A stretch of DNA of 23,994 nt from Macrostomum lignano (taxonomy: Eukaryota). The position numbers were made by a program, and so were the translations under genes. Of the stretch, positions 1-23,994 are shown piece after piece (within the stretch, counting starts at the first letter, position 1; the number at the start of each line of letters is the position of its first letter). Where the stretch lies: the NCBI GenBank assembly GCA_002269645.1, contig NIVC01001317.1, forward strand, positions 264,425 to 288,418. Reading direction: 5' to 3'. The notes beneath the pieces were generated by a model. It was not told the origin of the DNA and made no database searches. It saw nothing but the letters and a program-made list of their open reading frames with translations.

Positions 1-5
1 AATCA

Positions 6-3000
6 ATGATGAGATTTCTGGTCCGTGTTTCTGATTACCCATTCAAGCGGTAATGCTGTTACTTTTTACCAGAACTGAATGCCAATTTATCCAAGTTTAT
101 AATAGTAGAAGTTTAAATTAAAGGTAGGTAAATCAGGAGTTAGATGTTGATAACAATCAATGATGAGATTTCTGGTCCGTGTTTCTGATTACCCATTCAA
201 GCGGTAATGCTGTTACTTTTTACCAGAACTGAATGCCAATTTATCCAAGTTTATAATAGTAGAAGTTTAAATTAAAGGTAGGTAAATCAGGAGTTAGATG
301 TTGATAACAATCAATGATGAGATTTCTGGTCCGTGTTTCTGATTACCCATTCAAGCGGTAATGCTGTTACTTTTTACCAGAACTGAATGCCAATTTATCC
401 AAGTTTATAATAGTAGAAGTTTAAATTAAAGGTAGGTAAATCAGGAGTTAGATGTTGATAACAATCAATGATGAGATTTCTGGTCCGTGTTTCTGATTAC
501 CCATTCAAGCGGTAATGCTGTTACTTTTTACCAGAACTGAATGCCAATTTATCCAAGTTTATAATAGTAGAAGTTTAAATTAAAGGTAGGTAAATCAGGA
601 GTTAGATGTTGATAACAATCAATGATGAGATTTCTGGTCCGTGTTTCTGATTACCCATTCAAGCGGTAATGCTGTTACTTTTTACCAGAACTGAATGCCA
701 ATTTATCCAAGTTTATAATAGTAGAAGTTTAAATTAAAGGTAGGTAAATCAGGAGTTAGATGTTGATAACAATCAATGATGAGATTTCTGGTCCGTGTTT
801 CTGATTACCCATTCAAGCGGTAATGCTGTTACTTTTTACCAGAACTGAATGCCAATTTATCCAAGTTTATAATAGTAGAAGTTTAAATTAAAGGTAGGTA
901 AATCAGGAGTTAGATGTTGATAACAATCAATGATGAGATTTCTGGTCCGTGTTTCTGATTACCCATTCAAGCGGTAATGCTGTTACTTTTTACCAGAACT
1001 GAATGCCAATTTATCCAAGTTTATAATAGTAGAAGTTTAAATTAAAGGTAGGTAAATCAGGAGTTAGATGTTGATAACAATCAATGATGAGATTTCTGGT
1101 CCGTGTTTCTGATTACCCATTCAAGCGGTAATGCTGTTACTTTTTACCAGAACTGAATGCCAATTTATCCAAGTTTATAATAGTAGAAGTTTAAATTAAA
1201 GGTAGGTAAATCAGGAGTTAGATGTTGATAACAATCAATGATGAGATTTCTGGTCCGTGTTTCTGATTACCCATTCAAGCGGTAATGCTGTTACTTTTTA
1301 CCAGAACTGAATGCCAATTTATCCAAGTTTATAATAGTAGAAGTTTAAATTAAAGGTAGGTAAATCAGGAGTTAGATGTTGATAACAATCAATGATGAGA
1401 TTTCTGGTCCGTGTTTCTGATTACCCATTCAAGCGGTAATGCTGTTACTTTTTACCAGAACTGAATGCCAATTTATCCAAGTTTATAATAGTAGAAGTTT
1501 AAATTAAAGGTAGGTAAATCAGGAGTTAGATGTTGATAACAATCAATGATGAGATTTCTGGTCCGTGTTTCTGATTACCCATTCAAGCGGTAATGCTGTT
1601 ACTTTTTACCAGAACTGAATGCCAATTTATCCAAGTTTATAATAGTAGAAGTTTAAATTAAAGGTAGGTAAATCAGGAGTTAGATGTTGATAACAATCAA
1701 TGATGAGATTTCTGGTCCGTGTTTCTGATTACCCATTCAAGCGGTAATGCTGTTACTTTTTACCAGAACTGAATGCCAATTTATCCAAGTTTATAATAGT
1801 AGAAGTTTAAATTAAAGGTAGGTAAATCAGGAGTTAGATGTTGATAACAATCAATGATGAGATTTCTGGTCCGTGTTTCTGATTACCCATTCAAGCGGTA
1901 ATGCTGTTACTTTTTACCAGAACTGAATGCCAATTTATCCAAGTTTATAATAGTAGAAGTTTAAATTAAAGGTAGGTAAATCAGGAGTTAGATGTTGATA
2001 ACAATCAATGATGAGATTTCTGGTCCGTGTTTCTGATTACCCATTCAAGCGGTAATGCTGTTACTTTTTACCAGAACTGAATGCCAATTTATCCAAGTTT
2101 ATAATAGTAGAAGTTTAAATTAAAGGTAGGTAAATCAGGAGTTAGATGTTGATAACAATCAATGATGAGATTTCTGGTCCGTGTTTCTGATTACCCATTC
2201 AAGCGGTAATGCTGTTACTTTTTACCAGAACTGAATGCCAATTTATCCAAGTTTATAATAGTAGAAGTTTAAATTAAAGGTAGGTAAATCAGGAGTTAGA
2301 TGTTGATAACAATCAATGATGAGATTTCTGGTCCGTGTTTCTGATTACCCATTCAAGCGGTAATGCTGTTACTTTTTACCAGAACTGAATGCCAATTTAT
2401 CCAAGTTTATAATAGTAGAAGTTTAAATTAAAGGTAGGTAAATCAGGAGTTAGATGTTGATAACAATCAATGATGAGATTTCTGGTCCGTGTTTCTGATT
2501 ACCCATTCAAGCGGTAATGCTGTTACTTTTTACCAGAACTGAATGCCAATTTATCCAAGTTTATAATAGTAGAAGTTTAAATTAAAGGTAGGTAAATCAG
2601 GAGTTAGATGTTGATAACAATCAATGATGAGATTTCTGGTCCGTGTTTCTGATTACCCATTCAAGCGGTAATGCTGTTACTTTTTACCAGAACTGAATGC
2701 CAATTTATCCAAGTTTATAATAGTAGAAGTTTAAATTAAAGGTAGGTAAATCAGGAGTTAGATGTTGATAACAATCAATGATGAGATTTCTGGTCCGTGT
2801 TTCTGATTACCCATTCAAGCGGTAATGCTGTTACTTTTTACCAGAACTGAATGCCAATTTATCCAAGTTTATAATAGTAGAAGTTTAAATTAAAGGTAGG
2901 TAAATCAGGAGTTAGATGTTGATAACAATCAATGATGAGATTTCTGGTCCGTGTTTCTGATTACCCATTCAAGCGGTAATGCTGTTACTTTTTACCAGAA

Positions 3001-6000
3001 CTGAATGCCAATTTATCCAAGTTTATAATAGTAGAAGTTTAAATTAAAGGTAGGTAAATCAGGAGTTAGATGTTGATAACAATCAATGATGAGATTTCTG
3101 GTCCGTGTTTCTGATTACCCATTCAAGCGGTAATGCTGTTACTTTTTACCAGAACTGAATGCCAATTTATCCAAGTTTATAATAGTAGAAGTTTAAATTA
3201 AAGGTAGGTAAATCAGGAGTTAGATGTTGATAACAATCAATGATGAGATTTCTGGTCCGTGTTTCTGATTACCCATTCAAGCGGTAATGCTGTTACTTTT
3301 TACCAGAACTGAATGCCAATTTATCCAAGTTTATAATAGTAGAAGTTTAAATTAAAGGTAGGTAAATCAGGAGTTAGATGTTGATAACAATCAATGATGA
3401 GATTTCTGGTCCGTGTTTCTGATTACCCATTCAAGCGGTAATGCTGTTACTTTTTACCAGAACTGAATGCCAATTTATCCAAGTTTATAATAGTAGAAGT
3501 TTAAATTAAAGGTAGGTAAATCAGGAGTTAGATGTTGATAACAATCAATGATGAGATTTCTGGTCCGTGTTTCTGATTACCCATTCAAGCGGTAATGCTG
3601 TTACTTTTTACCAGAACTGAATGCCAATTTATCCAAGTTTATAATAGTAGAAGTTTAAATTAAAGGTAGGTAAATCAGGAGTTAGATGTTGATAACAATC
3701 AATGATGAGATTTCTGGTCCGTGTTTCTGATTACCCATTCAAGCGGTAATGCTGTTACTTTTTACCAGAACTGAATGCCAATTTATCCAAGTTTATAATA
3801 GTAGAAGTTTAAATTAAAGGTAGGTAAATCAGGAGTTAGATGTTGATAACAATCAATGATGAGATTTCTGGTCCGTGTTTCTGATTACCCATTCAAGCGG
3901 TAATGCTGTTACTTTTTACCAGAACTGAATGCCAATTTATCCAAGTTTATAATAGTAGAAGTTTAAATTAAAGGTAGGTAAATCAGGAGTTAGATGTTGA
4001 TAACAATCAATGATGAGATTTCTGGTCCGTGTTTCTGATTACCCATTCAAGCGGTAATGCTGTTACTTTTTACCAGAACTGAATGCCAATTTATCCAAGT
4101 TTATAATAGTAGAAGTTTAAATTAAAGGTAGGTAAATCAGGAGTTAGATGTTGATAACAATCAATGATGAGATTTCTGGTCCGTGTTTCTGATTACCCAT
4201 TCAAGCGGTAATGCTGTTACTTTTTACCAGAACTGAATGCCAATTTATCCAAGTTTATAATAGTAGAAGTTTAAATTAAAGGTAGGTAAATCAGGAGTTA
4301 GATGTTGATAACAATCAATGATGAGATTTCTGGTCCGTGTTTCTGATTACCCATTCAAGCGGTAATGCTGTTACTTTTTACCAGAACTGAATGCCAATTT
4401 ATCCAAGTTTATAATAGTAGAAGTTTAAATTAAAGGTAGGTAAATCAGGAGTTAGATGTTGATAACAATCAATGATGAGATTTCTGGTCCGTGTTTCTGA
4501 TTACCCATTCAAGCGGTAATGCTGTTACTTTTTACCAGAACTGAATGCCAATTTATCCAAGTTTATAATAGTAGAAGTTTAAATTAAAGGTAGGTAAATC
4601 AGGAGTTAGATGTTGATAACAATCAATGATGAGATTTCTGGTCCGTGTTTCTGATTACCCATTCAAGCGGTAATGCTGTTACTTTTTACCAGAACTGAAT
4701 GCCAATTTATCCAAGTTTATAATAGTAGAAGTTTAAATTAAAGGTAGGTAAATCAGGAGTTAGATGTTGATAACAATCAATGATGAGATTTCTGGTCCGT
4801 GTTTCTGATTACCCATTCAAGCGGTAATGCTGTTACTTTTTACCAGAACTGAATGCCAATTTATCCAAGTTTATAATAGTAGAAGTTTAAATTAAAGGTA
4901 GGTAAATCAGGAGTTAGATGTTGATAACAATCAATGATGAGATTTCTGGTCCGTGTTTCTGATTACCCATTCAAGCGGTAATGCTGTTACTTTTTACCAG
5001 AACTGAATGCCAATTTATCCAAGTTTATAATAGTAGAAGTTTAAATTAAAGGTAGGTAAATCAGGAGTTAGATGTTGATAACAATCAATGATGAGATTTC
5101 TGGTCCGTGTTTCTGATTACCCATTCAAGCGGTAATGCTGTTACTTTTTACCAGAACTGAATGCCAATTTATCCAAGTTTATAATAGTAGAAGTTTAAAT
5201 TAAAGGTAGGTAAATCAGGAGTTAGATGTTGATAACAATCAATGATGAGATTTCTGGTCCGTGTTTCTGATTACCCATTCAAGCGGTAATGCTGTTACTT
5301 TTTACCAGAACTGAATGCCAATTTATCCAAGTTTATAATAGTAGAAGTTTAAATTAAAGGTAGGTAAATCAGGAGTTAGATGTTGATAACAATCAATGAT
5401 GAGATTTCTGGTCCGTGTTTCTGATTACCCATTCAAGCGGTAATGCTGTTACTTTTTACCAGAACTGAATGCCAATTTATCCAAGTTTATAATAGTAGAA
5501 GTTTAAATTAAAGGTAGGTAAATCAGGAGTTAGATGTTGATAACAATCAATGATGAGATTTCTGGTCCGTGTTTCTGATTACCCATTCAAGCGGTAATGC
5601 TGTTACTTTTTACCAGAACTGAATGCCAATTTATCCAAGTTTATAATAGTAGAAGTTTAAATTAAAGGTAGGTAAATCAGGAGTTAGATGTTGATAACAA
5701 TCAATGATGAGATTTCTGGTCCGTGTTTCTGATTACCCATTCAAGCGGTAATGCTGTTACTTTTTACCAGAACTGAATGCCAATTTATCCAAGTTTATAA
5801 TAGTAGAAGTTTAAATTAAAGGTAGGTAAATCAGGAGTTAGATGTTGATAACAATCAATGATGAGATTTCTGGTCCGTGTTTCTGATTACCCATTCAAGC
5901 GGTAATGCTGTTACTTTTTACCAGAACTGAATGCCAATTTATCCAAGTTTATAATAGTAGAAGTTTAAATTAAAGGTAGGTAAATCAGGAGTTAGATGTT

Positions 6001-7008
6001 GATAACAATCAATGATGAGATTTCTGGTCCGTGTTTCTGATTACCCATTCAAGCGGTAATGCTGTTACTTTTTACCAGAACTGAATGCCAATTTATCCAA
6101 GTTTATAATAGTAGAAGTTTAAATTAAAGGTAGGTAAATCAGGAGTTAGATGTTGATAACAATCAATGATGAGATTTCTGGTCCGTGTTTCTGATTACCC
6201 ATTCAAGCGGTAATGCTGTTACTTTTTACCAGAACTGAATGCCAATTTATCCAAGTTTATAATAGTAGAAGTTTAAATTAAAGGTAGGTAAATCAGGAGT
6301 TAGATGTTGATAACAATCAATGATGAGATTTCTGGTCCGTGTTTCTGATTACCCATTCAAGCGGTAATGCTGTTACTTTTTACCAGAACTGAATGCCAAT
6401 TTATCCAAGTTTATAATAGTAGAAGTTTAAATTAAAGGTAGGTAAATCAGGAGTTAGATGTTGATAACAATCAATGATGAGATTTCTGGTCCGTGTTTCT
6501 GATTACCCATTCAAGCGGTAATGCTGTTACTTTTTACCAGAACTGAATGCCAATTTATCCAAGTTTATAATAGTAGAAGTTTAAATTAAAGGTAGGTAAA
6601 TCAGGAGTTAGATGTTGATAACAATCAATGATGAGATTTCTGGTCCGTGTTTCTGATTACCCATTCAAGCGGTAATGCTGTTACTTTTTACCAGAACTGA
6701 ATGCCAATTTATCCAAGTTTATAATAGTAGAAGTTTAAATTAAAGGTAGGTAAATCAGGAGTTAGATGTTGATAACAATCAATGATGAGATTTCTGGTCC
6801 GTGTTTCTGATTACCCATTCAAGCGGTAATGCTGTTACTTTTTACCAGAACTGAATGCCAATTTATCCAAGTTTATAATAGTAGAAGTTTAAATTAAAGG
6901 TAGGTAAATCAGGAGTTAGATGTTGATAACAATCAATGATGAGATTTCTGGTCCGTGTTTCTGATTACCCATTCAAGCGGTAATGCTGTTACTTTTTACC
7001 AGAACTGA
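6..7008 (+). ncRNA. SNORD18: Array of 46 copies of a box C/D snoRNA, U18/SNORD18-like (one per 154-bp unit; first copy 6-78)
   Basis: Per unit: box C ATGATGA (6-12), antisense element TGGTCCGTGTTT (19-30), box D' CTGA (31-34), hairpin TTACC-CATTCAAGC-GGTAA (35-53), box D CTGA (75-78). TGGTCCGTGTTTC is the exact reverse complement of the conserved LSU rRNA segment GAAACACGGACCA, the known U18 target (yeast 25S Am649, human 28S Am1313 in older numbering). Confidence 0.85.
6936..7008 (+). ncRNA. SNORD18: Terminal (probably ancestral) U18-like C/D snoRNA copy in the intron upstream of the RPL21 coding exon
   Basis: Box C 6936-6942, guide 6949-6960, D' 6961-6964, box D 7005-7008. Box D lies 80 nt upstream of the acceptor AG at 7087-7088, a typical position for intron-encoded C/D snoRNAs. 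Confidence 0.88.
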
Positions 7009-7101
7009 AATTACTTAGTCTATGAAAGTTGAGTTTATTGATTAATTAAGGCAGGTGTTTTTATACTGTTAATATCGTTAATTCCAGCTTAAGCTGACAA
7101 C

Positions 7102-7338
7102 ATGACCAACACCAAGGGTATTCGCCGCGGCACGCGGTACATGTTTGCCAGGGATTTCCGACGCCGCGGTGCCCTCCCCCTGTCCACCTACATGCGGGTG
7201 TTTAAACGCGGTGATATTGTCGATATTAAAGGCAACGGCAGCATACAGAAAGGTATGCCGTATAAAACCTATCACGGCAAAACTGGCCGCGTGTACAATG
7301 TCACACCACACGCTGTCGGTGTGATTGTTAATAAGCAG
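7102..7338 (+). CDS. RPL21: 60S ribosomal protein L21 (eL21), coding exon 1 (79 codons)
   Basis: [23 protein letters not shown]...[30 protein letters not shown] is the canonical eL21 N-terminus. Acceptor TTCCAG (AG 7087-7088) precedes a 13-nt UTR and the ATG; phase-0 donor CAG|GTAAGT at 7339. Confidence 0.97.
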
Positions 7339-7420
7339 GTAAGTTCGCGTAAAATTTATACAGAATCCTGAATTTTAAAACTCCTGACCACTTGTAGTCA
7401 CCCTGCAATGACTGTCAGTC

Positions 7421-7775
7421 CTGTCACTTACCTGTCATTTGTGTGACTCACCTGTCATTTGAGTGACACCTGTTATCTTTGTGACTCACCTGTTATTTGA
7501 GTGACTCATCTGTAATTTGAGTGACTCACCTGTTATTTGAGTGACTCATCTGTCATTTGAGTGACTCACCTGTCATTTGAGTGACTCGCCTGTCATTTGA
7601 GTGACACCTGTCATCTGAGTGACTCATCTGTCATCTTAGTGACTCACCTGTAATTTGAGTGACACCTGTCATCTGAGTGACTCATCTGTCATCTGAGTGA
7701 CTCACCTGTCATCTGAGTGACTCACCTGTTATTTAAGTGACTCACCTGTTTTTTGAGTTACACCTGTCATCTGAA
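7421..7775 (+). repeat. Intronic minisatellite, ~20-bp unit GAGTGACTCACCTGTCATTT, ~18 diverged copies
   Basis: Repeated GTGACTCACCTGT core with 18-20 bp periodicity inside the RPL21 intron 7339-7816. Confidence 0.92.
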
Positions 7776-7816
7776 TGACACATAACGATCGCCTCACCAC
7801 CCCACAAATTCACCAG

Positions 7817-8062
7817 GTGCGCAACCGCGTGATCCCCAAACGGATCAACGTCCGCATCGAGCACGTGAATCCCAGCAAGTGCCGACTGGACTTTCTTCGC
7901 CGCGTCAAAGAGAACGACATCAAGCGACGCGAGGCCAAAGCCGCTGGCAAGAAAATCTCCCTGAAGCGTCGGCCGCAGGGTCCGAGGCGCGCCACCATTG
8001 TGAAGACTAAGAAGAACAAGCCCCAGCTGCTGGAGCCGCTGCCCTACGAGCTGATCGCTTAG
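7817..8062 (+). CDS. RPL21: 60S ribosomal protein L21 (eL21), coding exon 2 (81 codons + TAG); spliced product 160 aa
   Basis: Acceptor CACCAG at 7816. VRNRVIPKRINVRIEHVNPSKCRLDFLRRVKEND...PQLLEPLPYELIA* continues in frame from NKQ and matches the eL21 C-terminus. Confidence 0.97.
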   Translation: MRNRVIPKRINVRIEHVNPSKCRLDFLRRVKENDIKRREAKAAGKKISLKRRPQGPRRATIVKTKKNKPQLLEPLPYELIA

Positions 8063-8150
8063 GCATTAAAAGGGGCCTGCGTAATTCTATACAATATTAC
8101 ATCTGGACTCGAGTAATGGGCAAATGAATTTTCAATTCCGAGAATTATGA

Positions 8151-8156
8151 AATAAA
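8151..8156 (+). terminator. Polyadenylation signal of RPL21
   Basis: AATAAA 88 nt after the stop codon, followed by a GT-rich tract (GGTTGTGTTGTTGTTGTTGG, ~8171-8190). Confidence 0.75.
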
Positions 8157-8300
8157 AAACACCGGCCTGTGGTTGTGTTGTTGTTGTTGGACAACTAAAG
8201 CTCTATTGGATGAAAGATTTGCGTTGGTGTTGTGTTGCTTCTTTTTGATGATAATATAATTAGCTTTTTCTAATTTTCGGCTTGTTAGGCTTGCAATGTA

Positions 8301-8665
8301 CAGCCTCCCAGATCCTCAGTTTCTGGGTCAGCCTCCCAGATCCTCAGTTGTTGGGCCACCAGCCTCCCAGATCCTCAGTTTTTGGGCCACAACTCCCCCC
8401 CCCAGATCCTCAGTTGTTGGGCCACCCCCCCCCCCAGATCCTCAGTTGTTGGGCCACCAGCCTCCCAGATCCCCTGTTGCTGGGCCATCCAGCCTCCCAG
8501 ATCCCCACTTGCTGGGCCAGCCTCCCAGATCCTCTGTTGCTGTGCCACCACTGCCTCCCAGCTCCTCAGTTGCTGGGCCAGCCTCCCGGATCCTCAGTTG
8601 CTGGGGGCCGGCCTCCCAGATCCTCAGTTGCTGGGCCAGCCTCCCAGATCCCCAGTTGCTAGGGC
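8301..8665 (+). repeat. Minisatellite, ~28-32-bp unit CAGCCTCCCAGATCCTCAGTTGCTGGGC(CAC), ~12 copies
   Basis: Recurrent CTCCCAGATCCTCAGTTG core. It explains the Pro/Ser-rich overlapping ORFs at 8282, 8296 and the 5' part of 8382. Confidence 0.92.
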
Positions 8666-8735
8666 ATTGTCACCCAGTACTCAGACTCAACTGCGTGTTA
8701 CCATCACCATTCATGCCAATTGGACAACCAACACA

Positions 8736-9472
8736 ATGGCAACCGCTGTGCTACCTCCGCCGCCCTCAATGCCGGATCCGAACTCCTCTGGCGGCAGCTT
8801 CAGTCCTCTAACTCTGTTCGAATGCACCATGACCAATGCCGGTATGCTGGTGGACAGTATGCCAGTTAGGGACCTGGTCTCGGCCCTACGCATCATTGGC
8901 ACTCTGCACACTCACGTTGTCAACATCATGGACCCTGGCGTGGCCAGCGTGTGCGACCTGGCCGATCAGTTCAACTCTCACCGGATTAAATGCCCCGCTG
9001 CCGCTGCCGAGACCGCCGCCGCCTCAGCTGCCGCCGCCGGCGAGGCCGAGCAGTCGCCAACTGCCAACTCCTCACTAGACGAAGGCGGCAACGCTAAGAA
9101 ACGCTTGAAACTGGACGATAATTCTATGGCCTCATCGTTAAACGATCAGAATTCTACGGATAACAATCAGACACTTAATAACACCGCTTCTGCTGCTGTC
9201 AATGTCAAGTCCGAATCTGTTGCCGAATCTGATGATGATTGTTGTATCCTTGACGACGGCGGCTTAGGCCTGATTGGTTCCGACTTTTACACCAGCATGC
9301 AGCAGCAGCAACATCAGCCTCGCAATCCGCAGATATCCTCAGCAGCTTCAGCATCTGCCGCTCCACCCTATGGCGGTCCCGTGCAAGATTCGGCAGCTAT
9401 GAAGCAGATTTTACGCAACACCTACAAAGCTATGCGAGCTGGCGGTCCGCACCTATACGATTTTAATAGGCC
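8736..9472 (+). CDS. Exon 1 of a multi-exon gene encoding a putative nuclear protein (C14orf93-like C-terminal half)
   Basis: ATG at 8736 (ACAATGG context), GC-rich coding bias, Ala/Asn/Gln-rich linkers, NLS-like AKKRLKL. The genomic ORF stops at 9476, but a phase-2 donor CC|GTGAGA at 9473 splices in frame to the exon at 9913 (...LYDFNRP|WNDPLN...). Confidence 0.7.
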
Positions 9473-9535
9473 GTGAGAGATTCATCTGTGTATTCTCTTA
9501 ATTTTCTACTGGGTTTGTTAAATATGACAGATTAT

Positions 9536-9850
9536 ACTACTGAATTGAGAGTAGCTTAATACTGCATGTGCCTCACAATTTATTAGCTTGAGCTTAAAAA
9601 TCAAGAAATTATACTACTTAATTGATAGTAGTTTAATGGCACATGTATGGACTTATTAATGCTTCTCAGTAATCATTACAGCGGTTTAAAAATCTCAGAA
9701 GAGACTACACTACTTAACTGAAAGTAGTTTAATAGCACATGCACGGAGTTATTTATGCTTCTCGGGAATCATTTCTACGAGTTTAAAAGTGCTAAAAGAG
9801 ATAATACTACTTACTAAAATGAAAGTAGTTTATTAGCACATGCGCATAGT
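9536..9850. repeat. Four diverged 77-97-bp units, each starting with an ACTACT-N(7-11)-AGTAG hairpin
   Basis: ACTACT starts at 9536, 9613, 9709 and 9806. Each is followed by AGTAG(T/C)TTAAT/TTATT..(A/G)CATG, and the units share TTTAAAA/CTTAAAA downstream. Confidence 0.7.
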
Positions 9851-9912
9851 TTTTTATTCCTAATAATCGCACAATCGTTTTCTCCCTACCCTCACTGCCT
9901 TGTCTGCGCCAG

Positions 9913-10010: not shown

Positions 10011-10906
10011 GTGAGTGCAGCTCCATTTTGAATGTGCATAAAAATTATTGTGTGATTTGTATATAGATATTGAAACATTGGCGCGGTAGCATTTGCAGAG
10101 GTTTACAACCCCCAGTTACTGTTTCATTATTATTAATAATAGTATTATTATTACTATCCTCATCCTCAAAATGAGAGCCTGATGCTCTCTTGACACACTG
10201 ATGAAGCATTAATTGTATGAATTAATTAACTAATTAAAGCATTAATTGGCCTGTTAACAATGCATAGTGCCGAGCATTAACAACAATAATAATTCCACTG
10301 CAAATTCTAATGACATTTAAGGTCAGTCAGTCTCTATGCAGTTCAGTGTTCCCACTACCTGCGGAAATTCCGCAATGCGGAATTTCTGGCTCGCCTGTGG
10401 AAAATCAAGAGGAATTTTGCAATCTGCGGAAATTTGGTTGCTCCGATTTTGCTCTGATATTTGAATATATGAGGAATTGAGGACACACTTTAGTTTTATA
10501 CAATCTATATACTAAATATCTTATATATATATATATTTGTCAATATCTAGTATTTTCTATTTGTTGGAATTCTCCTTAATTATTTGTACACATTATACTA
10601 CTGTTTAAAAGTTCATTTCTTTATTGATTGTAGTTCTTAGTTTAGTCTATGTTCCACCGCCACCCTCTTACTAGGAAACTTAGTTTTTCGCATAGAGCTA
10701 GAATGGAAATTGGAACCTAATGAGTCTGGAAGCGAGTTTAATGAGTCAATACCAATAGTTAATTAAATAGATCAGGTTGGCTAGAAAGACTTTACAAAGT
10801 AGCTCAACTTATTTTTCAGCTTTGCTGCCTTTGCGACTTGCGTTTAACTCAATAAGACAATAACTGAAAAAATATTCTGAGAATACGCTCGTACCCTCGT
10901 AGTGAG

Positions 10907-13282
10907 ATGTCTCTAAGCAAGCCTCGTGCAACAGCATTTCGACATGAGTGGTTACAGCGATCCATTGATGGACGAGTCCTTAGCGAGTGGCTTCAGCCTG
11001 ATCGAAGTGACGAACTGCTTGGCTTCTGCACCGTGTGCAAAAAATCATTTCACCTCGGCACTAGTGGGTTCGGCGCAGTTACAGCCCACGCCCAAGGCAA
11101 GAAGCACAAGAGTCGATTGCCAGTCATGAATGAGACTGGGATAGCACACTTTTTTCCTACTCAAGGCAGCAAGCCATCTTTCACTGCCATGAAGAAGGCT
11201 GACGCAGAAGTGCTAATGGCAGAGCTGCGACTTGGAATCCATTTTATTGAGCACAATATTGCGTACAATACAGCCGACCACTCGGGTGTGTACCCAGCTA
11301 TGTTTCATGATAGCAAAATTGCTCAAGACATGAAGTGCCATCGCACAAAACTGTGCTATCTTGTTAATCACGCTCTTGCACCAGTGATGCGTGATGAGAT
11401 GATTCAAGACTTGAACTCTGGCTGCGGACTGTTTTCCCTTTCTATTGACGAGTCATCTGATGGGGCACGAAAGCACATGGCAGTTGTAATATCATTTGTG
11501 TCGTCGAAGAAGGGAAGGCTGTGTACAACTGCCTTGAAAACAGTTGAAGTTTCTGACTGCTCAGCCGCTGCTCTGAAAGAGGAAGTTTTGAAGATTCTCG
11601 ATGAATTCAACATTCCGATTAGGAACTGTGTTAGCATATCAACAGATGGACCAGCAGTTATGGTTGGAAAGTTTAACGGCTTCCAAAAAATAATGCATGA
11701 CTTTGCATCTCATCTTGTTTCCATTGGACCATGCAGTTTGCATATTGTCTCCAATGCGGTTCGACGTGCATGTGAAGCCTTTGATGGAAATGTAGAGGAC
11801 TTCGCTGATGAAGTGTTCTCCTACTTTCAGACCTCGAAAAGGTGGACGCGTTATAACAAAGTTCAGTCACTGCTTCAAGTGGCCCAGCATCGCATGTTGC
11901 GGCGCGTTGAAACAAGATGGGTGCAGCTTTTGCCTGTTGTTAATAGGCTTATTGAGCAATATGATTCTCTGGAAGAATTCTTTGTGAAGAATCCATCTCT
12001 GATTGAGCAAAAGACCAAAAAGACCAAAGAAATTGCTGAGCACCTAAAGTCGACGCATACACTGCTTAATCTGCAATTTCTGGCTGCTGTCTTGCCGCAT
12101 CTAGACCAATTCGAGAAGGCATTTCAGACAGAGGAGCCGTGTGTCCATCTTTTGCATGGAGAAGTCCGCAATTTGTTTAGGCAGACTTTGTCATTCTTTT
12201 TAAATCCAGCGCACATTCAGGAGAACAATCGACATTTGAGAAATTTGTCGTTGGAAGGCAAATACTTCCTCTCTAATGAAGCCATCTTTATCGGCGAAGC
12301 AGCTAAAGAGACATTAAAAAAAGGCTTGTCGGACACTCAACAGAAGCTCTTTTTCCTACGTGTTCGCACCTTCTATCGTGAACTTGCATTGTACTTGCAA
12401 GAACATTTGCCTCTGTCGAATCCTGTCTTACGCTCGCTACAATTTCTGGATCCGCAATATCCTATGAAAGTCGGTCTCGCAGCAGCTACTACATCGCTTG
12501 CTGCATGTAACCTAGCCAAACAAATGGAATATACACCTGATTCCGTATCAAAAATTGATTCCGAATGGCGATGCTTCCTCGTTGACCAACAGGTAGTGGC
12601 TTTGGCTAAGGACAATGATGTGGTTACATTTTGGCTTCGCGTGTCAGCCCTAGAGCTTGGTGGTCAAAAAAAGTACGGCACACTAACCCGACTAGCTTTG
12701 GGTGCTCTGACCATTCAGCCAGGCAACGCTGCAGTAGAGCGAGTCTTTAGCGAGTTATCGGACTTGTTAACGAAAAAACGCAACAAGCTTGGTGAATTGT
12801 CTATTGATGCCTGCCTTTTTGTTCGACACTACATCCGCCAATCTGGGCTAGTTGGTGAGGAGCCTACAACCTGCGAAAACTTTCCATTGACAGACGTCTA
12901 CGTTCAGTCTGCTGGGAAGGCTCGTTCAGTGTACATGGAATTCCTTCAACAGCAAAGAGATGCTGATAAGGCCAAGAAAGATGCACGGATTGCCGCTAAA
13001 CAGTTGGAAGAGCAGCTTGCTGCTGAGATTGAAGTAAACAAGAAGAAGATGGAATTGGAGGCGGCTGAAAAAAAGTTGGCTGCAGAGCGTGAAATAATTG
13101 AAGCTGAGAAGCGAGCTGCTTCGGCTATGCTGCTCGAGTATCAGAAAAAAATGAGGACTTTAGAAGAGCGAGAGGCCAAAGCTCTACATGATGACGCCAA
13201 GCTGCTGAAGCGAAAGTTGAAGACTCAAGACGAGCTGGCTGCAGAAGCACTGAAAAAGGCCGCCAAGATGATATGCAAATGA
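10907..13282 (+). CDS. hAT transposase, 791 aa, uninterrupted
   Basis: N-terminal zinc finger FCTVCKK...TAHAQGKKH; catalytic D in SLSIDESSD; second D in ISTDGPAVMVG; CxxH motif CSLH; RVETRW; catalytic E in the dimerization-domain motif GNAAVERVFS. Confidence 0.93.
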   Translation: MSLSKPRATAFRHEWLQRSIDGRVLSEWLQPDRSDELLGFCTVCKKSFHLGTSGFGAVTAHAQGKKHKSRLPVMNETGIAHFFPTQGSKPSFTAMKKADAEVLMAELRLGIHFIEHNIAYNTADHSGVYPAMFHDSKIAQDMKCHRTKLCYLVNHALAPVMRDEMIQDLNSGCGLFSLSIDESSDGARKHMAVVISFVSSKKGRLCTTALKTVEVSDCSAAALKEEVLKILDEFNIPIRNCVSISTDGPAVMVGKFNGFQKIMHDFASHLVSIGPCSLHIVSNAVRRACEAFDGNVEDFADEVFSYFQTSKRWTRYNKVQSLLQVAQHRMLRRVETRWVQLLPVVNRLIEQYDSLEEFFVKNPSLIEQKTKKTKEIAEHLKSTHTLLNLQFLAAVLPHLDQFEKAFQTEEPCVHLLHGEVRNLFRQTLSFFLNPAHIQENNRHLRNLSLEGKYFLSNEAIFIGEAAKETLKKGLSDTQQKLFFLRVRTFYRELALYLQEHLPLSNPVLRSLQFLDPQYPMKVGLAAATTSLAACNLAKQMEYTPDSVSKIDSEWRCFLVDQQVVALAKDNDVVTFWLRVSALELGGQKKYGTLTRLALGALTIQPGNAAVERVFSELSDLLTKKRNKLGELSIDACLFVRHYIRQSGLVGEEPTTCENFPLTDVYVQSAGKARSVYMEFLQQQRDADKAKKDARIAAKQLEEQLAAEIEVNKKKMELEAAEKKLAAEREIIEAEKRAASAMLLEYQKKMRTLEEREAKALHDDAKLLKRKLKTQDELAAEALKKAAKMICK

Positions 13283-15354: not shown

Positions 15355-15477
15355 GTGTGTGTGTGTGTGTGTGCCTGTCTGTGTATGTGTCTGTCTGTCT
15401 GTCTGTCTCTGTCTGTCTGTGTATGTGTCTGTCTGTCTGTCTGTCTTCCTGTGTGTGTGTGTGTGTCTGTCTTAGTG

Positions 15478-15513
<36 letters not shown>

Positions 15514-15740
15514 TGTCTGCCTGTCTGTGTATGTGTCTCTGTCTGTCTGCTTGTCTGTCTGTCTGTGTATGTGTGTGTGTGTGTGTGCCTGTCTGCCTCT
15601 GTCTGTCTGTCTGTCTGTCTTCCTGTGTGTGTGTGTGTGTGTGTGTCTGTCTGTCTGTCTGTCTTCCTGTGTGTGTGTGTGTCTGTCTGTCTGTCTGTCT
15701 GTCTTCCTGTGTGTGTGTGTGTGTGTCTGTCTGTCTGTCT
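15355..15740. repeat. Compound microsatellite (GT)n/(GTCT)n
   Basis: Alternating TG dinucleotide and GTCT tetranucleotide runs; source of the CVCV/THTH ORFs. Confidence 0.97.
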
Positions 15741-17900: not shown

Positions 17901-17938
17901 AGATAGGTAGGTAGATAGATAGATAGATAGATAGATAG

Positions 17939-18006
<68 letters not shown>

Positions 18007-18039
18007 GATAAATATAGATAGATAGATAGATAGATAAAT

Positions 18040-18081
<42 letters not shown>

Positions 18082-18114
18082 GATAAATATAGATAGATAG
18101 ATAGATAGATAAAT

Positions 18115-18152
<38 letters not shown>

Positions 18153-18185
18153 GATAAATATAGATAGATAGATAGATAGATAAAT

Positions 18186-18238
<53 letters not shown>

Positions 18239-18321
18239 AAGATAGAAAGATATATAGATATTAGATGGATAGATAGATAGATAGATACATTCATAGGTAG
18301 ATAGATGCGTACGTAGATAGA
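17901..18321. repeat. (GATA)n microsatellite with interruptions
   Basis: Long AGAT/GATA run with recurring GATGATAAATATA interruptions. Confidence 0.97.
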
Positions 18322-21740: not shown

Positions 21741-23070
21741 GGGAGAGAGTGGAGATGGGAGAGAGGAGATTGGACGGAGAGTGATGGGAGAGTGGGGATG
21801 GGAGAGTGGAGATGGGAGAGTGGGGATAAGAGGGAGAGGAAATGGGAGGGAGAGTGGAGATGGAAGGGAGAGTGGGGATGGGAGGGAGAGTGGAGATGGG
21901 AGAGTGGGGATGGAGAGTGGGGATGGGAGAGTGGGGATGGGTGAGTGGGGATGGAAGGGAGAGTGGAGACGGGAGAGTGGGGATGGGAGGGAGAGTGGAG
22001 ACGGGAGAGTGGGGATGGGAGAGTGGGATGGGAGAGTGGGATGGGAGAGTGGAGATGGGAGAGTGGGGATGGGAGAGTGGAGATGGAGAGTGGGGATGGG
22101 AGAGTGGGGATGGGAGAGTGGAGATGGGAGAGTGGGGATGGGAGAGTGGGGATGGGAGAGTGGAGATGGGAGAGTGGGGATGGGAGAGTGGGGATGGGAG
22201 AGTGGGGATGGGAGAGTGGGGATGGGAGAGTGGGGATGGGAGAGTGGAGATGGGAGAGTGGGGATGGGAGAGTGGAGATGGGAGAGTGGAGATGGGAGAG
22301 TGGGGATGGGAGAGTGGGGATGGAGAGTGGGGATGGGAGAGTGGGGATGGGAGAGTAGGGATGGGAGAGGGAGAGTGGAGATGGAGAGTGGGGATGGGAG
22401 AGTGGGGATGGGAGAGTGGGGATGGGAGAGTGGAGATGGGAGAGTGGAGATGGGAGAGTGGGGATGGAGAGTGGGGATGGGAGAGTGGGGATGGGAGAGT
22501 GGAGATGGGAGAGTGGGGATGGGAGAGTGGGGATGGATGAGTGGGGATGGAAGGGAGAGTGGAGACGGGAGAGTGGGGATGGGAGGGAGAGTGGAGACGG
22601 GAGAGTGGGGATGGGAGGGAGAGAGGAGATGGGAGGGAGAGTGGGATGGGGAGAGTGGGGATGGGAGAGTGGAGATGGGAGAGTGGGGATGGGAGAGTGG
22701 GGATGGGAGAGTGGGGATGGGAGAGTGGAGATGGGAGAGTGGAGATGGGAGAGTGGGGATGGAGGGAGAGAGGAGATGGGAGGAGAGTGGGGATGGGAGG
22801 GAGAGAGGAGATGGGAGGGAGATGGGAGGGAGAGAGGAGATGGGAGGGAGAGTGGAGATGGGAGGGAGAGAGGAGATGGGAGGGAGAGTGGAGATGGGAG
22901 GGAGAGTGGGGATGGGAGGGAGAGTGGAGATGGGAGGGAGAGTGGGGATGGGAGGAGAGTGGGGATGGGAGGGAGAGAGGAGATAGGAGTGAGAGAGTTG
23001 AGACGGGAGAGAGGAGATGGGAGGAAGAGAGTTGAGATTGGAAGGAGAGAAGAGATGAGAGGAGATGGGA
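21741..23070. repeat. Purine-rich minisatellite, ~14-bp unit GGGAGAGTGG(G/A)GAT, preceded by GA-rich sequence from ~21575
   Basis: Dozens of GGGAGAGTGGGGAT/GGGAGAGTGGAGAT units; source of the ESGDGRVGMGEW and PSPLS ORFs. Confidence 0.96.
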
Positions 23071-23678: not shown

Positions 23679-23994
23679 CATCAGTTGTTTTTGGCGCCAA
23701 TCGGTTGTTTTAGATAATCGGTCAATCGGTCGTTTTTGGCGCCAATCGGTTGTTTTGGCGCCAATCGGTTGTTTTAGACAATCGGTCGTTTTTGGCGCCA
23801 ATCGGTTGTTTTTGGCACCAATCGGTTGTTTTTGGCGCCAATCAGTTGTTTTTACACCAATCGGTTGTTTTAAACAATCGGTTGTTTTTGGCGCCAATCA
23901 GTTGTTTCTGGCACCAATCGTTGTTTTTGGCACAAATAGGTTGCTTTTGGCGCCAATAGGTTGCTTTTGGCACCAATCGGTTGTTTTTGGCGCC
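23679..23994. repeat. 20-bp tandem repeat (TTTTTGGCGCCAATCGGTTG)n, truncated by the right window edge
   Basis: About 15 diverged units carrying TTGG(C/A)(G/A)CCAATC(G/A)GTTG. Confidence 0.92.

What the first reader, a model, noticed from the sequence alone, without database searches (positions are those of the whole stretch)
1..7009. At least 46 tandem copies of a U18-like methylation-guide snoRNA in a ribosomal-protein intron
What looks like a plain 154-bp satellite is a complete box C/D snoRNA per unit (seen: C box, 13-nt perfect LSU rRNA complement, D', D). rRNA-guide snoRNAs normally occur at one to a few copies, usually one per intron. Large tandem C/D arrays are established mainly for orphan imprinted clusters (SNORD115/116, SNORD113/114) in mammals, not for a canonical rRNA guide. 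Inference: this is either a real, very recent snoRNA amplification (a satellite born from a functional RNA gene) or an assembly expansion. It makes the RPL21 upstream intron at least 7 kb long.
Basis: partly seen in the sequence, partly recalled or inferred. Interest (0 to 1): 0.9.

Follow-up and report, generated by a model that had tools for sequence, protein, structure and literature searches.

The report
Tandem U18-type snoRNA array upstream of RPL21
In the flatworm Macrostomum lignano the only genes for a conserved ribosomal-RNA methylation guide (U18-type snoRNA) sit as a head-to-tail array just upstream of the ribosomal protein L21 coding exons, and one of the three genome copies has expanded it to about 50 identical units, although the exact number and the perfect identity cannot be trusted without raw long reads.

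Summary
Window 1-7009 is 45.5 copies of a 154-bp unit with no mismatch. Each of 46 units carries a full box C/D module: C box, a 13-nt guide that perfectly matches the organism's own 28S rRNA, D', a hairpin, a degenerate C' and a D box.

The genome is Macrostomum lignano Mlig_3_7, built from PacBio CLR reads with Canu and polished with Pilon. The window's contig starts inside the array, directly after a scaffold gap. Two sister contigs bound the array at 49.5 units plus two older flanking copies.

All 163 such modules in the assembly lie at RPL21 loci. The two other subgenome paralogs carry 9 and 4 copies with a 113-bp period and real variants between copies. Tandem U18 duplication is therefore genuine and copy number varies. 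The size of the 50-copy array rests on essentially one assembled measurement, and its 100% identity is at least partly a polishing product.

SNORD18 is the best Rfam hit, but at 32.2 bits it falls below the 41-bit cut-off. The "intron" is more likely an outron: sister contigs carry the last 6 nt of the spliced leader exactly at the acceptor, and no consensus cis donor lies upstream.

Multi-copy guide snoRNA arrays are known in protists, plants and Drosophila introns. I rate this a new variant of a known kind, of moderate interest.

The parts
1..7009 (+). Tandem array: 45.5 units of 154 bp with zero variation. It is cut on the left by the contig start, which follows a 1896-N scaffold gap.
2..80 (+). 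First U18-type box C/D snoRNA copy; ends are approximate and inferred. C box AUGAUGA 6-12, guide UGGUCCGUGUUUC 19-31, D' CUGA 31-34, hairpin AUUACC/GGUAAU 34-39/49-54, degenerate C' UGCUGU 54-59, D box CUGA 75-78. The pattern repeats every 154 bp, giving 46 copies.
81..154 (+). Spacer of the 154-bp unit, found only in this array. It contains the TATA-like GTTTAAATTA (111-120), the only block shared with the 113-bp spacer, and a 5'-splice-site-like AGGTAGGTAAAT (122-133). It shows no significant fold.
6932..7010 (+). Last (46th) snoRNA copy: C box 6936-6942, D box 7005-7008. The repeat ends right after CTGAA.
7010..7081 (+). Unique AT-rich stretch between the last copy and the acceptor.
7082..7087 (+). 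3' splice acceptor TTCCAG, matching the M. lignano trans-splice acceptor motif [T/C]TNCAG. Sister contigs read TGCATG here, which is the 3' end of the spliced leader.
7088..7338 (+). RPL21 first coding exon: 14-nt 5' UTR, ATG at 7102, 79 codons.
7339..7816 (+). RPL21 cis intron (GTAAGT...CAG), filled by a 20-bp minisatellite at 7412-7783.
7817..8156 (+). RPL21 second exon: CDS to the TAG at 8060-8062, AATAAA at 8151-8156.

Best explanation
The array is a real, recent tandem amplification of the gene for the U18-equivalent box C/D snoRNA of Macrostomum lignano.

Mechanism, step by step:
1. The array lies in the 5' transcribed, non-coding part of the RPL21 gene, in sense orientation (shown).
2. 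RNA polymerase II starts in the roughly 170-bp gap after the upstream methyltransferase gene, or reads through from it, and transcribes the array into RPL21 (inferred).
3. The spliced leader is joined at window 7087|7088, releasing the array as an outron (inferred from an SL imprint in sister contigs).
4. The box C/D core proteins (Snu13, Nop56, Nop58, fibrillarin) assemble on each C/D motif and protect an approximately 80-nt RNA while nucleases remove the spacers (established knowledge of the class, not tested here).
5. The 13-nt guide upstream of D' pairs with 28S rRNA 840-852 (shown). It directs 2'-O-methylation of A845, the site equivalent to human 28S Am1313 and yeast 25S Am649 (equivalence from my own knowledge; methylation inferred).

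The three subgenome paralogs carry 4, 9 and about 52 copies. The large array therefore arose after the recent genome duplication, by unequal exchange or slippage of a new 154-bp unit. That unit is the same snoRNA with a new 75-nt spacer.

Because about 50 snoRNAs share one excised RNA, releasing the internal copies needs endonucleolytic cuts in the spacers. This is unlike the usual animal arrangement of one snoRNA per intron.
For: Module and target:
- Complete module in all 46 units.
- Guide perfectly complementary to the organism's own 28S, with the target A at +5 from D'.
- Best Rfam hit is SNORD18, E 2.3e-4, with guide and D' identical to the consensus.

This is the organism's only U18 source:
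- All 163 C-box/guide/D' modules in the 764-Mb assembly are at RPL21 loci. Apart from rDNA, the 12-mer occurs only as scattered singletons.

Functional constraint:
- Among 12 distinct copy variants, UGAUGA, the guide, D', ACCAGA and D never vary.
- Changes fall in the hairpin or loop, including a C-G to U-A compensatory change and an A-U to G-U change, and in the flanks.

Tandem duplication is real:
- The paralogs on C420 (8 copies of a 113-bp unit plus 1 older copy) and C2369 (3+1) have ordered variants between copies and flanks that diverge 2-3%. This fits the three subgenomes described for this assembly.

Size of the large array:
- Array bounded by unique sequence on both sides in C3057, with the same 7622 bp (49.49 units) in C1318.

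Outron:
- Acceptor motif and SL imprint.
- No GT[A/G]AG between the upstream gene's AATAAA and the first copy.
Against: - No expression, processing or methylation data could be consulted.
- The score is below the Rfam SNORD18 cut-off.
- The 154-type copies have only a 2-bp terminal stem (CA/UG), against 5 bp (CAGCA/UGCUG) in the 113-type. They may therefore mature poorly.
- The perfect identity is suspect. In C3057, 5 of 35 three-base G/C runs in the flank carry uncorrected 1-nt deletions, but 0 of 49 in the array do (P about 5e-4). The array was therefore polished by piled-up multi-mapping reads.
- Contigs break at or in the array.
- C1318 and C3057 are byte-identical over the array, so they may not be independent measurements.
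- The SL imprint is 6 nt only, and position -7 was not converted.
Confidence: 0.6

Rival explanations
1. Assembly distortion. A tandem U18 array exists, but its length of about 50 units and its perfect homogeneity come from noisy-read consensus (Canu on PacBio CLR) followed by Pilon polishing with multi-mapping reads. The true array could be much shorter, longer or heterogeneous.
For: - Assembly method and its known redundancy.
- The window's contig starts inside the array after a 1896-N gap, and the pre-gap sequence has no homology to the true upstream flank.
- C1318 starts 13 nt before the first copy.
- The array is cleaner than its own flanks in C3057.
- The three large-array contigs are near-identical and probably represent one paralog.
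Against: - One contig (C3057) has unique sequence on both sides of the array, and two contigs give exactly 7622 bp.
- Long-read assemblers tend to collapse tandem arrays rather than inflate them (general knowledge).
- The sister paralogs independently show tandem U18 arrays of 4 and 9 copies.
Confidence: 0.2
2. Inert satellite. The 154-bp units are snoRNA-derived but do not yield mature RNA because they lack a terminal stem. Functional U18 would come from the older flanking copies and from the 113-bp copies of the other two paralogs.
For: - The 154-type has only CA/UG next to the boxes, whereas the 113-type has CAGCA/UGCUG.
- The spacer has no fold that could direct cleavage (z = 0.27).
- Fifteen per cent of this genome is simple or tandem repeats.
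Against: - From the C box to 4 nt past the D box, the snoRNA body is identical to the 113-type.
- A possible external stem, UUGAUAA/UUAUC(C)AA, flanks each copy (read directly from the sequence).
- The sense orientation, inside a highly expressed ribosomal-protein transcription unit, means core proteins would meet intact C/D motifs.
Confidence: 0.25
3. Cis intron. A very short TOP-like first exon (CTTTTTTTCAATTTTTAGCTTCTAG|GTTAAAAG) would be spliced in cis to 7088, so the array would be a classical 5'-UTR intron.
For: - A pyrimidine-rich TOP-like stretch and AG|GT dinucleotides lie 10-35 nt upstream of the first copy.
- Ribosomal-protein genes commonly host snoRNAs in introns.
Against: - The candidate donors are GTTAA and GTTAG, not the species' GT[A/G]AG.
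- The SL hexamer is imprinted at the acceptor in two sister contigs of an RNA-seq-polished assembly.
Confidence: 0.25
4. Independent genes. Each repeat would be its own transcription unit, driven by the TATA-like GTTTAAATTA in the spacer, as in tandem snRNA, SL RNA or 5S arrays.
For: - GTTTAAATTA is the only block shared by the 113-bp and 154-bp spacers.
- It lies 33 nt (113-type) or 46 nt (154-type) upstream of the C box.
Against: - A 10-nt match is not significant in this AT-rich sequence (12% of shuffles match as well).
- The distance differs between the two unit types.
- An internal T5 run (unit 63-67) would terminate Pol III (read directly from the sequence).
- The first, older copy has no such element.
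Confidence: 0.1

Closest known systems
U18 / SNORD18 (Rfam RF00093; human copies in RPL4 introns)
   Same: Box C/D architecture. The guide plus D' (UGGUCCGUGUUUCUGA) is identical, and it targets the same universally conserved LSU site (GAAAC[A]CGGACC). It uses a single guide; the D-side antisense has no rRNA match above chance. It is hosted by a ribosomal-protein gene.
   Different: It scores 32.2 bits against the family cut-off of 41, and has a longer C'-to-D segment. The host is RPL21, not RPL4. About 50 copies sit in one excised region instead of one copy per intron. The RPL21 loci of three neodermatan flatworms lack it.
Mammalian imprinted arrays SNORD115/116 and SNORD113/114
   Same: Tens of near-identical box C/D snoRNA genes arranged head to tail, in the sense strand of one long transcription unit.
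   Different: In mammals each copy sits in its own intron between small non-coding exons, has no rRNA target and is imprinted (my own knowledge). Here the guide is canonical, and no exon structure fits the unit. The only acceptor-like CAG lies inside the snoRNA, 2 nt before the D box.
Polycistronic or multi-copy guide snoRNA clusters of Euglena, trypanosomatids, plants and yeast
   Same: Several modification-guide snoRNAs lie in one orientation with short spacers, presumably cut from one precursor. [quoted passage not shown] These organisms, like M. lignano, use SL trans-splicing (Euglena, trypanosomatids).
   Different: Those clusters usually mix different snoRNAs and are repeated as whole clusters. 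Here a single snoRNA is repeated, in an animal, upstream of a protein-coding exon.
Drosophila intronic snoRNA gene clusters (Huang et al. 2004, 2005)
   Same: An animal precedent for several tandemly duplicated snoRNA isoforms inside one intron. This breaks the one-snoRNA-per-intron rule (titles seen; details from my own knowledge).
   Different: Those clusters have few copies, are mostly H/ACA and have diverged isoforms. Here there are about 50 identical C/D copies. The papers themselves could not be read.

Membership tests
Box C/D snoRNA (class) | C box RUGAUGA near the 5' end and D box CUGA near the 3' end | tested here: met
   AUGAUGA at unit 6-12 and CUGA at unit 75-78 in all 46 copies. 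Both are invariant across the 12 variants on 5 contigs; only the R position varies, A or G.
Box C/D snoRNA (class) | Antisense element of at least 10 nt ending at D or D', with the target nucleotide paired to the 5th position upstream of the box | tested here: met
   A 13-nt perfect duplex with the organism's own 28S 840-852 abuts D'. A845 is at position 5.
Box C/D snoRNA (class) | Short terminal stem joining the 5' and 3' ends | tested here: inconclusive
   The 113-type has 5 bp (CAGCA/UGCUG). The 154-type has 2 bp (CA/UG) plus a possible external stem.
Box C/D snoRNA (class) | Stable RNA of about 70-120 nt bound by fibrillarin, Nop56, Nop58 and Snu13 | not testable with these tools
   No RNA or protein data were available.
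SNORD18 / U18 (Rfam RF00093) | Score at or above the curated gathering threshold of the covariance model | tested here: not met
   32.2 bits against 41. No hit at gathering. It is the best hit of all families at E 2.3e-4, with the D box misaligned. The whole-genome family search was insensitive and found nothing.
SNORD18 / U18 (Rfam RF00093) | D'-linked guide to the LSU site GAAAC[A]CGGACC | tested here: met
   Guide plus D' match the consensus at 16 of 16 positions, and the target is present in the organism's own 28S.
SNORD18 / U18 (Rfam RF00093) | 2'-O-methylation of the target adenosine depends on the snoRNA | not testable with these tools
   This needs RiboMeth-seq and a knock-down.
SNORD115/116-type array | Each copy lies in its own intron, with exons between copies | tested here: not met
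   The unit has a donor-like AGGTAGGTAAAT (122-133). The only pyrimidine-CAG acceptor (unit 63-72) lies inside the snoRNA, 2 nt upstream of the D box, so splicing there would cut the RNA.
SNORD115/116-type array | Orphan guide with no rRNA or snRNA target | tested here: not met
   The guide is canonical, with a perfect 13-nt rRNA complement.
Polycistronic snoRNA cluster | Several snoRNA genes on the same strand with short spacers and no intervening protein gene | tested here: met
   Spacers are 35-75 nt and all copies are on the + strand.
Polycistronic snoRNA cluster | Co-transcription and endonucleolytic separation of the units | not testable with these tools
   No significant spacer hairpin was found (z = 0.27). 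No RNA data were available.
Outron-encoded RNA (SL trans-spliced host) | SL is added at the acceptor downstream of the element, with no cis donor upstream | tested here: inconclusive
   The evidence is indirect. The acceptor fits [T/C]TNCAG. TGCATG, the 3' end of the SL, replaces TTCCAG in C1318 and C3057 of an RNA-seq-polished assembly. No GT[A/G]AG lies upstream. SL tails fused to non-intron sequence are common in this assembly, in 18 of 20 sampled sites.

The most novel reading that the evidence does not exclude
A canonical, essential-type rRNA methylation guide has very recently become a satellite. After the genome duplication of M. lignano, one of three paralogous RPL21 loci amplified its U18 gene from a handful of copies to about 50 homogeneous ones. 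These lie inside the outron of an SL trans-spliced ribosomal-protein gene. An animal would then have to release dozens of identical snoRNAs from one excised RNA by endonucleolytic processing, or else accumulate poly-snoRNP or sno-lncRNA-like species. U18 dosage would differ more than tenfold between subgenomes.
Probability: 0.35. Interest if true: 0.65.

Novelty: new variant of a known kind. Interest (0 to 1): 0.45.

Why it matters
If the array is real and expressed, it gives a datable example of a tandem repeat born from a functional RNA gene. It postdates the whole-genome duplication and has graded paralogs of 4, 9 and about 52 copies.

It would also be a natural test of how an animal processes many snoRNAs from one excised RNA, and possibly the first described snoRNA cluster carried in an outron.

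It matters practically too. In Mlig_3_7 the locus is assembled redundantly, broken at the array, and carries RNA-seq polishing scars. Copy-number or expression analyses of U18 and RPL21 in this model flatworm need care.

Tried and rejected
- **Rfam at gathering thresholds:** no hit in the window.
- **Whole-genome search with RF00093:** nothing found, and the controls were also silent, so the search is uninformative.
- **Second target for the D-side antisense:** the best match to 18S, 5.8S or 28S is 7 nt, equal to the shuffled median. I rejected a double-guide reading.
- **Origin of the 154-type spacer:** alignments to the 113-type spacer, the A-B spacer and the 5' and 3' flanks are at or near shuffle level, with best P about 0.04. 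The origin is unresolved.
- **Spacer hairpin as an RNase III-type cleavage signal:** no significant fold.
- **Conservation of the host relationship:** the RPL21 loci of Schistosoma mansoni, Paragonimus westermani and Schistocephalus solidus contain no U18 guide within the DNA held.
- **Exact-protein contig look-up for RPL21:** nothing on record; the window's own genome is masked.
- **Synteny across the scaffold gap:** the 8.1 kb before the gap in C1317 has no similarity to the true upstream flank.
- **Literature:** no paper links M. lignano and snoRNA arrays, snoRNAs and outrons, or mentions the gene id. Huang et al. 2005 is not held.
- **Mini-exon model** (donor in the spacer, acceptor before the D box): rejected, because the D box would fall outside the intron.
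Full report
**1. What is in the window**

TRF finds a single array at 1-7009 with period 154, 45.5 copies, 100% matches and no indels. A direct comparison of every base with the base 154 positions earlier gives zero differences.

Each unit reads AAUCA-AUGAUGA-GAUUUC-UGGUCCGUGUUUC-UGA-UUACCCAUUCAAGCGGUAA-UGCUGU-UACUUUUUACCAGAA-CUGA-AUGCC, followed by a 75-nt AT-rich spacer. In unit coordinates:

| Element | Unit position |
|---|---|
| C box | 6-12 |
| Guide | 19-31 |
| D' | 31-34 |
| Hairpin, 6 bp (AUUACC/GGUAAU) | 34-39 / 49-54 |
| Degenerate C' (UGCUGU) | 54-59 |
| D box | 75-78 |

The window holds 46 complete modules. The last D box is at 7005-7008, and the repeat stops right after CTGAA.

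**2. Where the window comes from**

The spliced RPL21 product (7102-7338 plus 7817-8062, 160 aa) is 100% identical to Macrostomum lignano BOX15_Mlig028121g1.

That assembly was built with Canu 1.4 from PacBio CLR reads. It was polished with Pilon using Illumina and RNA-seq reads, and scaffolded with SSPACE. It is highly redundant, and 15% of it is simple or tandem repeats.

The window is the last 24 kb of scaffold C1317. A run of 1896 N lies immediately upstream of position 1, so the underlying contig begins inside the array. The 8.1 kb before the gap has no similarity to the true upstream flank seen on sister contigs. The window therefore gives only a lower bound of 46 copies.

**3. The same locus elsewhere in the genome**

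The unit occurs on four more contigs. All 163 C-box/guide/D' modules of the assembly are at these RPL21 loci: 46 + 52 + 52 + 9 + 4. Outside them the 12-mer guide occurs only in the 29 rDNA copies, as its complement, and as about 16 scattered singletons. That is fewer than the reversed-pattern control. This is the organism's only U18-type gene family.

C1318 and C3057 show the left edge of the array. In order they contain:
- an older, diverged copy A;
- one copy followed by a 35-nt spacer (the "113-type");
- 49.49 perfect 154-bp units (7622 bp);
- the same 3' flank and RPL21.

C420 has copy A plus eight 113-bp units with ordered variants (CAGC/CAAC 5' flanks, GAUUGCCUAUU in the last two). C2369 has copy A plus three units.

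The flanks of the three locus types differ by about 2-3%. C1317, C1318 and C3057 differ from one another only by a 3-nt cluster and homopolymer lengths. This matches the published finding that Mlig_3_7 consists of three paralogous subgenomes about 2.2% apart.

I therefore read the data as three paralogs carrying about 52, 9 and 4 U18 genes, with the first assembled redundantly. Tandem duplication of U18 at this locus is genuine and variable. The big array is confined to one paralog, so it postdates the recent genome duplication.

**4. Is the size and perfection of the array real?**

For:
- C3057 has unique sequence on both sides of the array.
- C3057 and C1318 give exactly the same 7622 bp.

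Against:
- These two arrays, and the 250 nt to their left, are byte-identical. They may not be independent.
- Contigs break at the array.
- C3057 is a poorly polished contig. It has 1-nt deletions in 5 of 35 three-base G/C runs in the 2.1-kb flank, one of them inside the RPL21 CDS. Yet none of the 49 CCC runs of its array is affected (P about 5e-4). The array was evidently corrected by piled-up multi-mapping reads, which would also erase any real differences between copies.

The 100% identity therefore says nothing about biology. The copy number rests on essentially one assembled measurement.

**5. What the RNA is**

The organism's own rDNA (L020) was delimited with Rfam. The guide pairs perfectly over 13 nt with 28S 840-852 (GAAACACGGACCA). 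The fifth nucleotide upstream of D' pairs with A845. From my own knowledge, this is the site methylated under U18 guidance in human (28S Am1313) and yeast (25S Am649).

The D-side antisense has no rRNA match above shuffled expectation.

Rfam gives no hit at gathering thresholds. In E-value mode SNORD18 is the top family at 32.2 bits against a cut-off of 41, E 2.3e-4. The stretch UGGUCCGUGUUUCUGA matches the consensus at every position. The model forces its D box onto the C' box, because this RNA has a longer C'-to-D segment.

Across 12 distinct copy variants, UGAUGA, the guide, D', ACCAGA and D never change. Substitutions fall in the hairpin, including one compensatory C-G to U-A change and one A-U to G-U change, or in its loop and the flanks. 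That is the pattern expected of a functional guide RNA.

I call it the U18-equivalent, and likely orthologous, snoRNA, while recording that formal Rfam membership is not met.

The 113-type copies have a 5-bp terminal stem (CAGCA/UGCUG). The 154-type copies have only CA/UG plus a possible external stem UUGAUAA/UUAUC(C)AA. A 7-bp internal complement, UUCUGGU/ACCAGAA, is conserved in all copies as CUGGU/ACCAG.

**6. Intron or outron?**

The upstream neighbour is a class I SAM-methyltransferase gene on the same strand. It ends with a stop codon and an AATAAA about 170 bp before copy A.

That gap contains a TOP-like pyrimidine run. Its only donor-like sites are GTTAA and GTTAG, whereas M. lignano cis donors are GT[A/G]AG. 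The acceptor at 7082-7087, TTCCAG, fits the species' trans-splice acceptor motif [T/C]TNCAG.

In C1318 and C3057 this hexamer reads TGCATG. The three changed bases turn it into the last six nucleotides of the 35-nt spliced leader...ATTTATTGCATG. Because the assembly was polished with RNA-seq reads, the simplest explanation is that SL-bearing RPL21 mRNA reads overwrote the genome there. That would be an indirect record of trans-splicing exactly at 7087|7088.

SL tails fused to non-intron sequence are common in this assembly: 18 of 20 sampled SL hits. Only the rDNA-linked copy and one other are followed by GTAAG.

I therefore think the array lies in an outron, or possibly in an intercistronic region if RPL21 is co-transcribed with the methyltransferase gene. 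My confidence is about 0.65. A classical 5'-UTR intron remains possible.

**7. Mechanism and its open step**

Shown:
- sense orientation upstream of RPL21;
- complete C/D modules;
- perfect guide-target pairing;
- a conservation pattern typical of a functional guide;
- copy-number differences between paralogs.

Inferred:
- transcription through the array;
- SL trans-splicing;
- snoRNP assembly;
- methylation of A845.

The unusual requirement is release of internal copies. Exonucleases entering from the two ends of an excised RNA stop at the first and last snoRNP. So either an endonuclease cuts the spacers, as in plant, yeast and protist polycistronic clusters, or long poly-snoRNP species persist. 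The spacer has no significant fold (z = 0.27). An internal T5 run argues against Pol III transcription of individual units. The shared TATA-like GTTTAAATTA is not statistically significant.

**8. Comparison with known systems and novelty**

Human SNORD18 copies lie one per intron in RPL4. The RPL21 loci of three parasitic flatworms lack a U18 guide.

Large homogeneous C/D arrays are known in mammals for orphan imprinted snoRNAs, each in its own intron. The present unit has no workable exon-intron structure, and its guide is canonical. Multi-copy, linked guide snoRNA genes are common in Euglena and trypanosomatids. Intronic clusters of duplicated snoRNAs are described in Drosophila (titles).

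The RNA itself is thus a new member of a known family. The arrangement is a new variant of known kinds: about 50 identical copies of one canonical guide upstream of an SL acceptor of a ribosomal-protein gene in an animal, polymorphic between subgenomes. I found no paper describing it.

**9. Verdict**

- Interest is moderate (0.45). The biology is plausible and neat, but the striking features, 50 copies and perfect identity, are exactly the ones this assembly cannot vouch for, and nothing about expression could be tested.

Noticed in passing
window 7082-7087; C1318:7946-7951 (L012); C3057 (L014 about 3780): The sister contigs read TGCATG where the window, C420 and C2369 read TTCCAG or TTTCAG. 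TGCATG is the 3' end of the M. lignano spliced leader. This is probably a Pilon correction driven by RNA-seq reads.
   Followed up: partly
G000:C1212:16525 (L039); also C1211, C1213, C1214, C3672, C3830, C4525, C4853: Spliced-leader RNA genes (SL followed by GTAAG) sit inside the rDNA repeat, about 2.1 kb upstream of the 18S gene, once per repeat.
   Followed up: partly
L024-L043 (20 sampled genomic SL hits): Eighteen of 20 sampled genomic matches to the SL 3' half are followed by exon-like sequence rather than GTAAG, with 18-35 nt of SL present. They are either retro-copies of trans-spliced mRNAs or RNA-seq polishing artefacts. Some form small families, for example ...GCATG|AACCATCAAAACA at three of the four such sampled sites (a fourth reads AACCTTCAAAAGA).
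   Followed up: partly
L011 8105-10000 (C1317:262529-264424) and the sequence before it: The scaffold join across the 1896-N gap is not supported by paralog synteny. The 8.1 kb before the gap shares nothing with the methyltransferase gene that lies upstream of the array on C3057, C420 and C2369.
   Followed up: partly
C3057 (L014) and C2369 (L016), RPL21 exons: There are single-base homopolymer deletions inside the RPL21 coding sequence, for example CCC to CC in exon 2 of C3057 and three in exon 1 of C2369. These look like uncorrected PacBio errors in redundant contigs, not pseudogenes.
   Followed up: partly
window 7412-7783: The RPL21 cis intron is almost entirely a 20-bp minisatellite (ACTCACCTGTCATTTGAGTG, about 18 copies, 83% matches). 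Its length differs strongly among the three paralogs.
   Followed up: no
window 8301-8665: A 28-31-bp repeat (CAGCCTCCCAGATCCTCAGTTGCTGGGCCAC, about 12 copies) lies directly downstream of the RPL21 poly(A) signal. It is in frame with a long open frame (8289-9476) that has no Pfam match.
   Followed up: partly
window 10868-13282: An uninterrupted 804-aa ORF has a hAT-family dimerisation domain (E 1.7e-7) and a weak DUF4371 match. It is an intact-looking hAT-type transposase or a domesticated derivative.
   Followed up: partly
window 15356-15740, 17901-18306, 21745-23023, 23680-23994: The rest of the window is dense in simple repeats: (TGTC)n about 98 copies, (AGAT)n about 106 copies, and a 14-bp repeat GAGAGTGGAGATGG of about 94 copies. 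A 20-bp repeat runs to the end of the contig, so the contig ends in repeats on both sides.
   Followed up: no
unit positions 16-22 and 68-74 (e.g. window 16-22 / 68-74): UUCUGGU, which overlaps the first 4 nt of the guide, is perfectly complementary to ACCAGAA just before the D box. The core CUGGU/ACCAG is invariant in all 12 copy variants. It may close the C/D motif from the inside or mask part of the guide in the free RNA.
   Followed up: partly
unit positions 113-133 (e.g. window 113-133): Each 154-bp spacer carries AUUAAA, a poly(A)-signal variant, immediately followed by GGUAGGUAAAU, a U1-binding or 5'-splice-site-like motif. That gives 45 such pairs in one transcribed region. Any significance is unknown.
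   Followed up: no
window 9613-9857; L014 6457-9564: A 96-bp repeat (2.5 copies, 80%) lies downstream of the next gene. C3057 has a 3108-N gap at the corresponding place.
   Followed up: no
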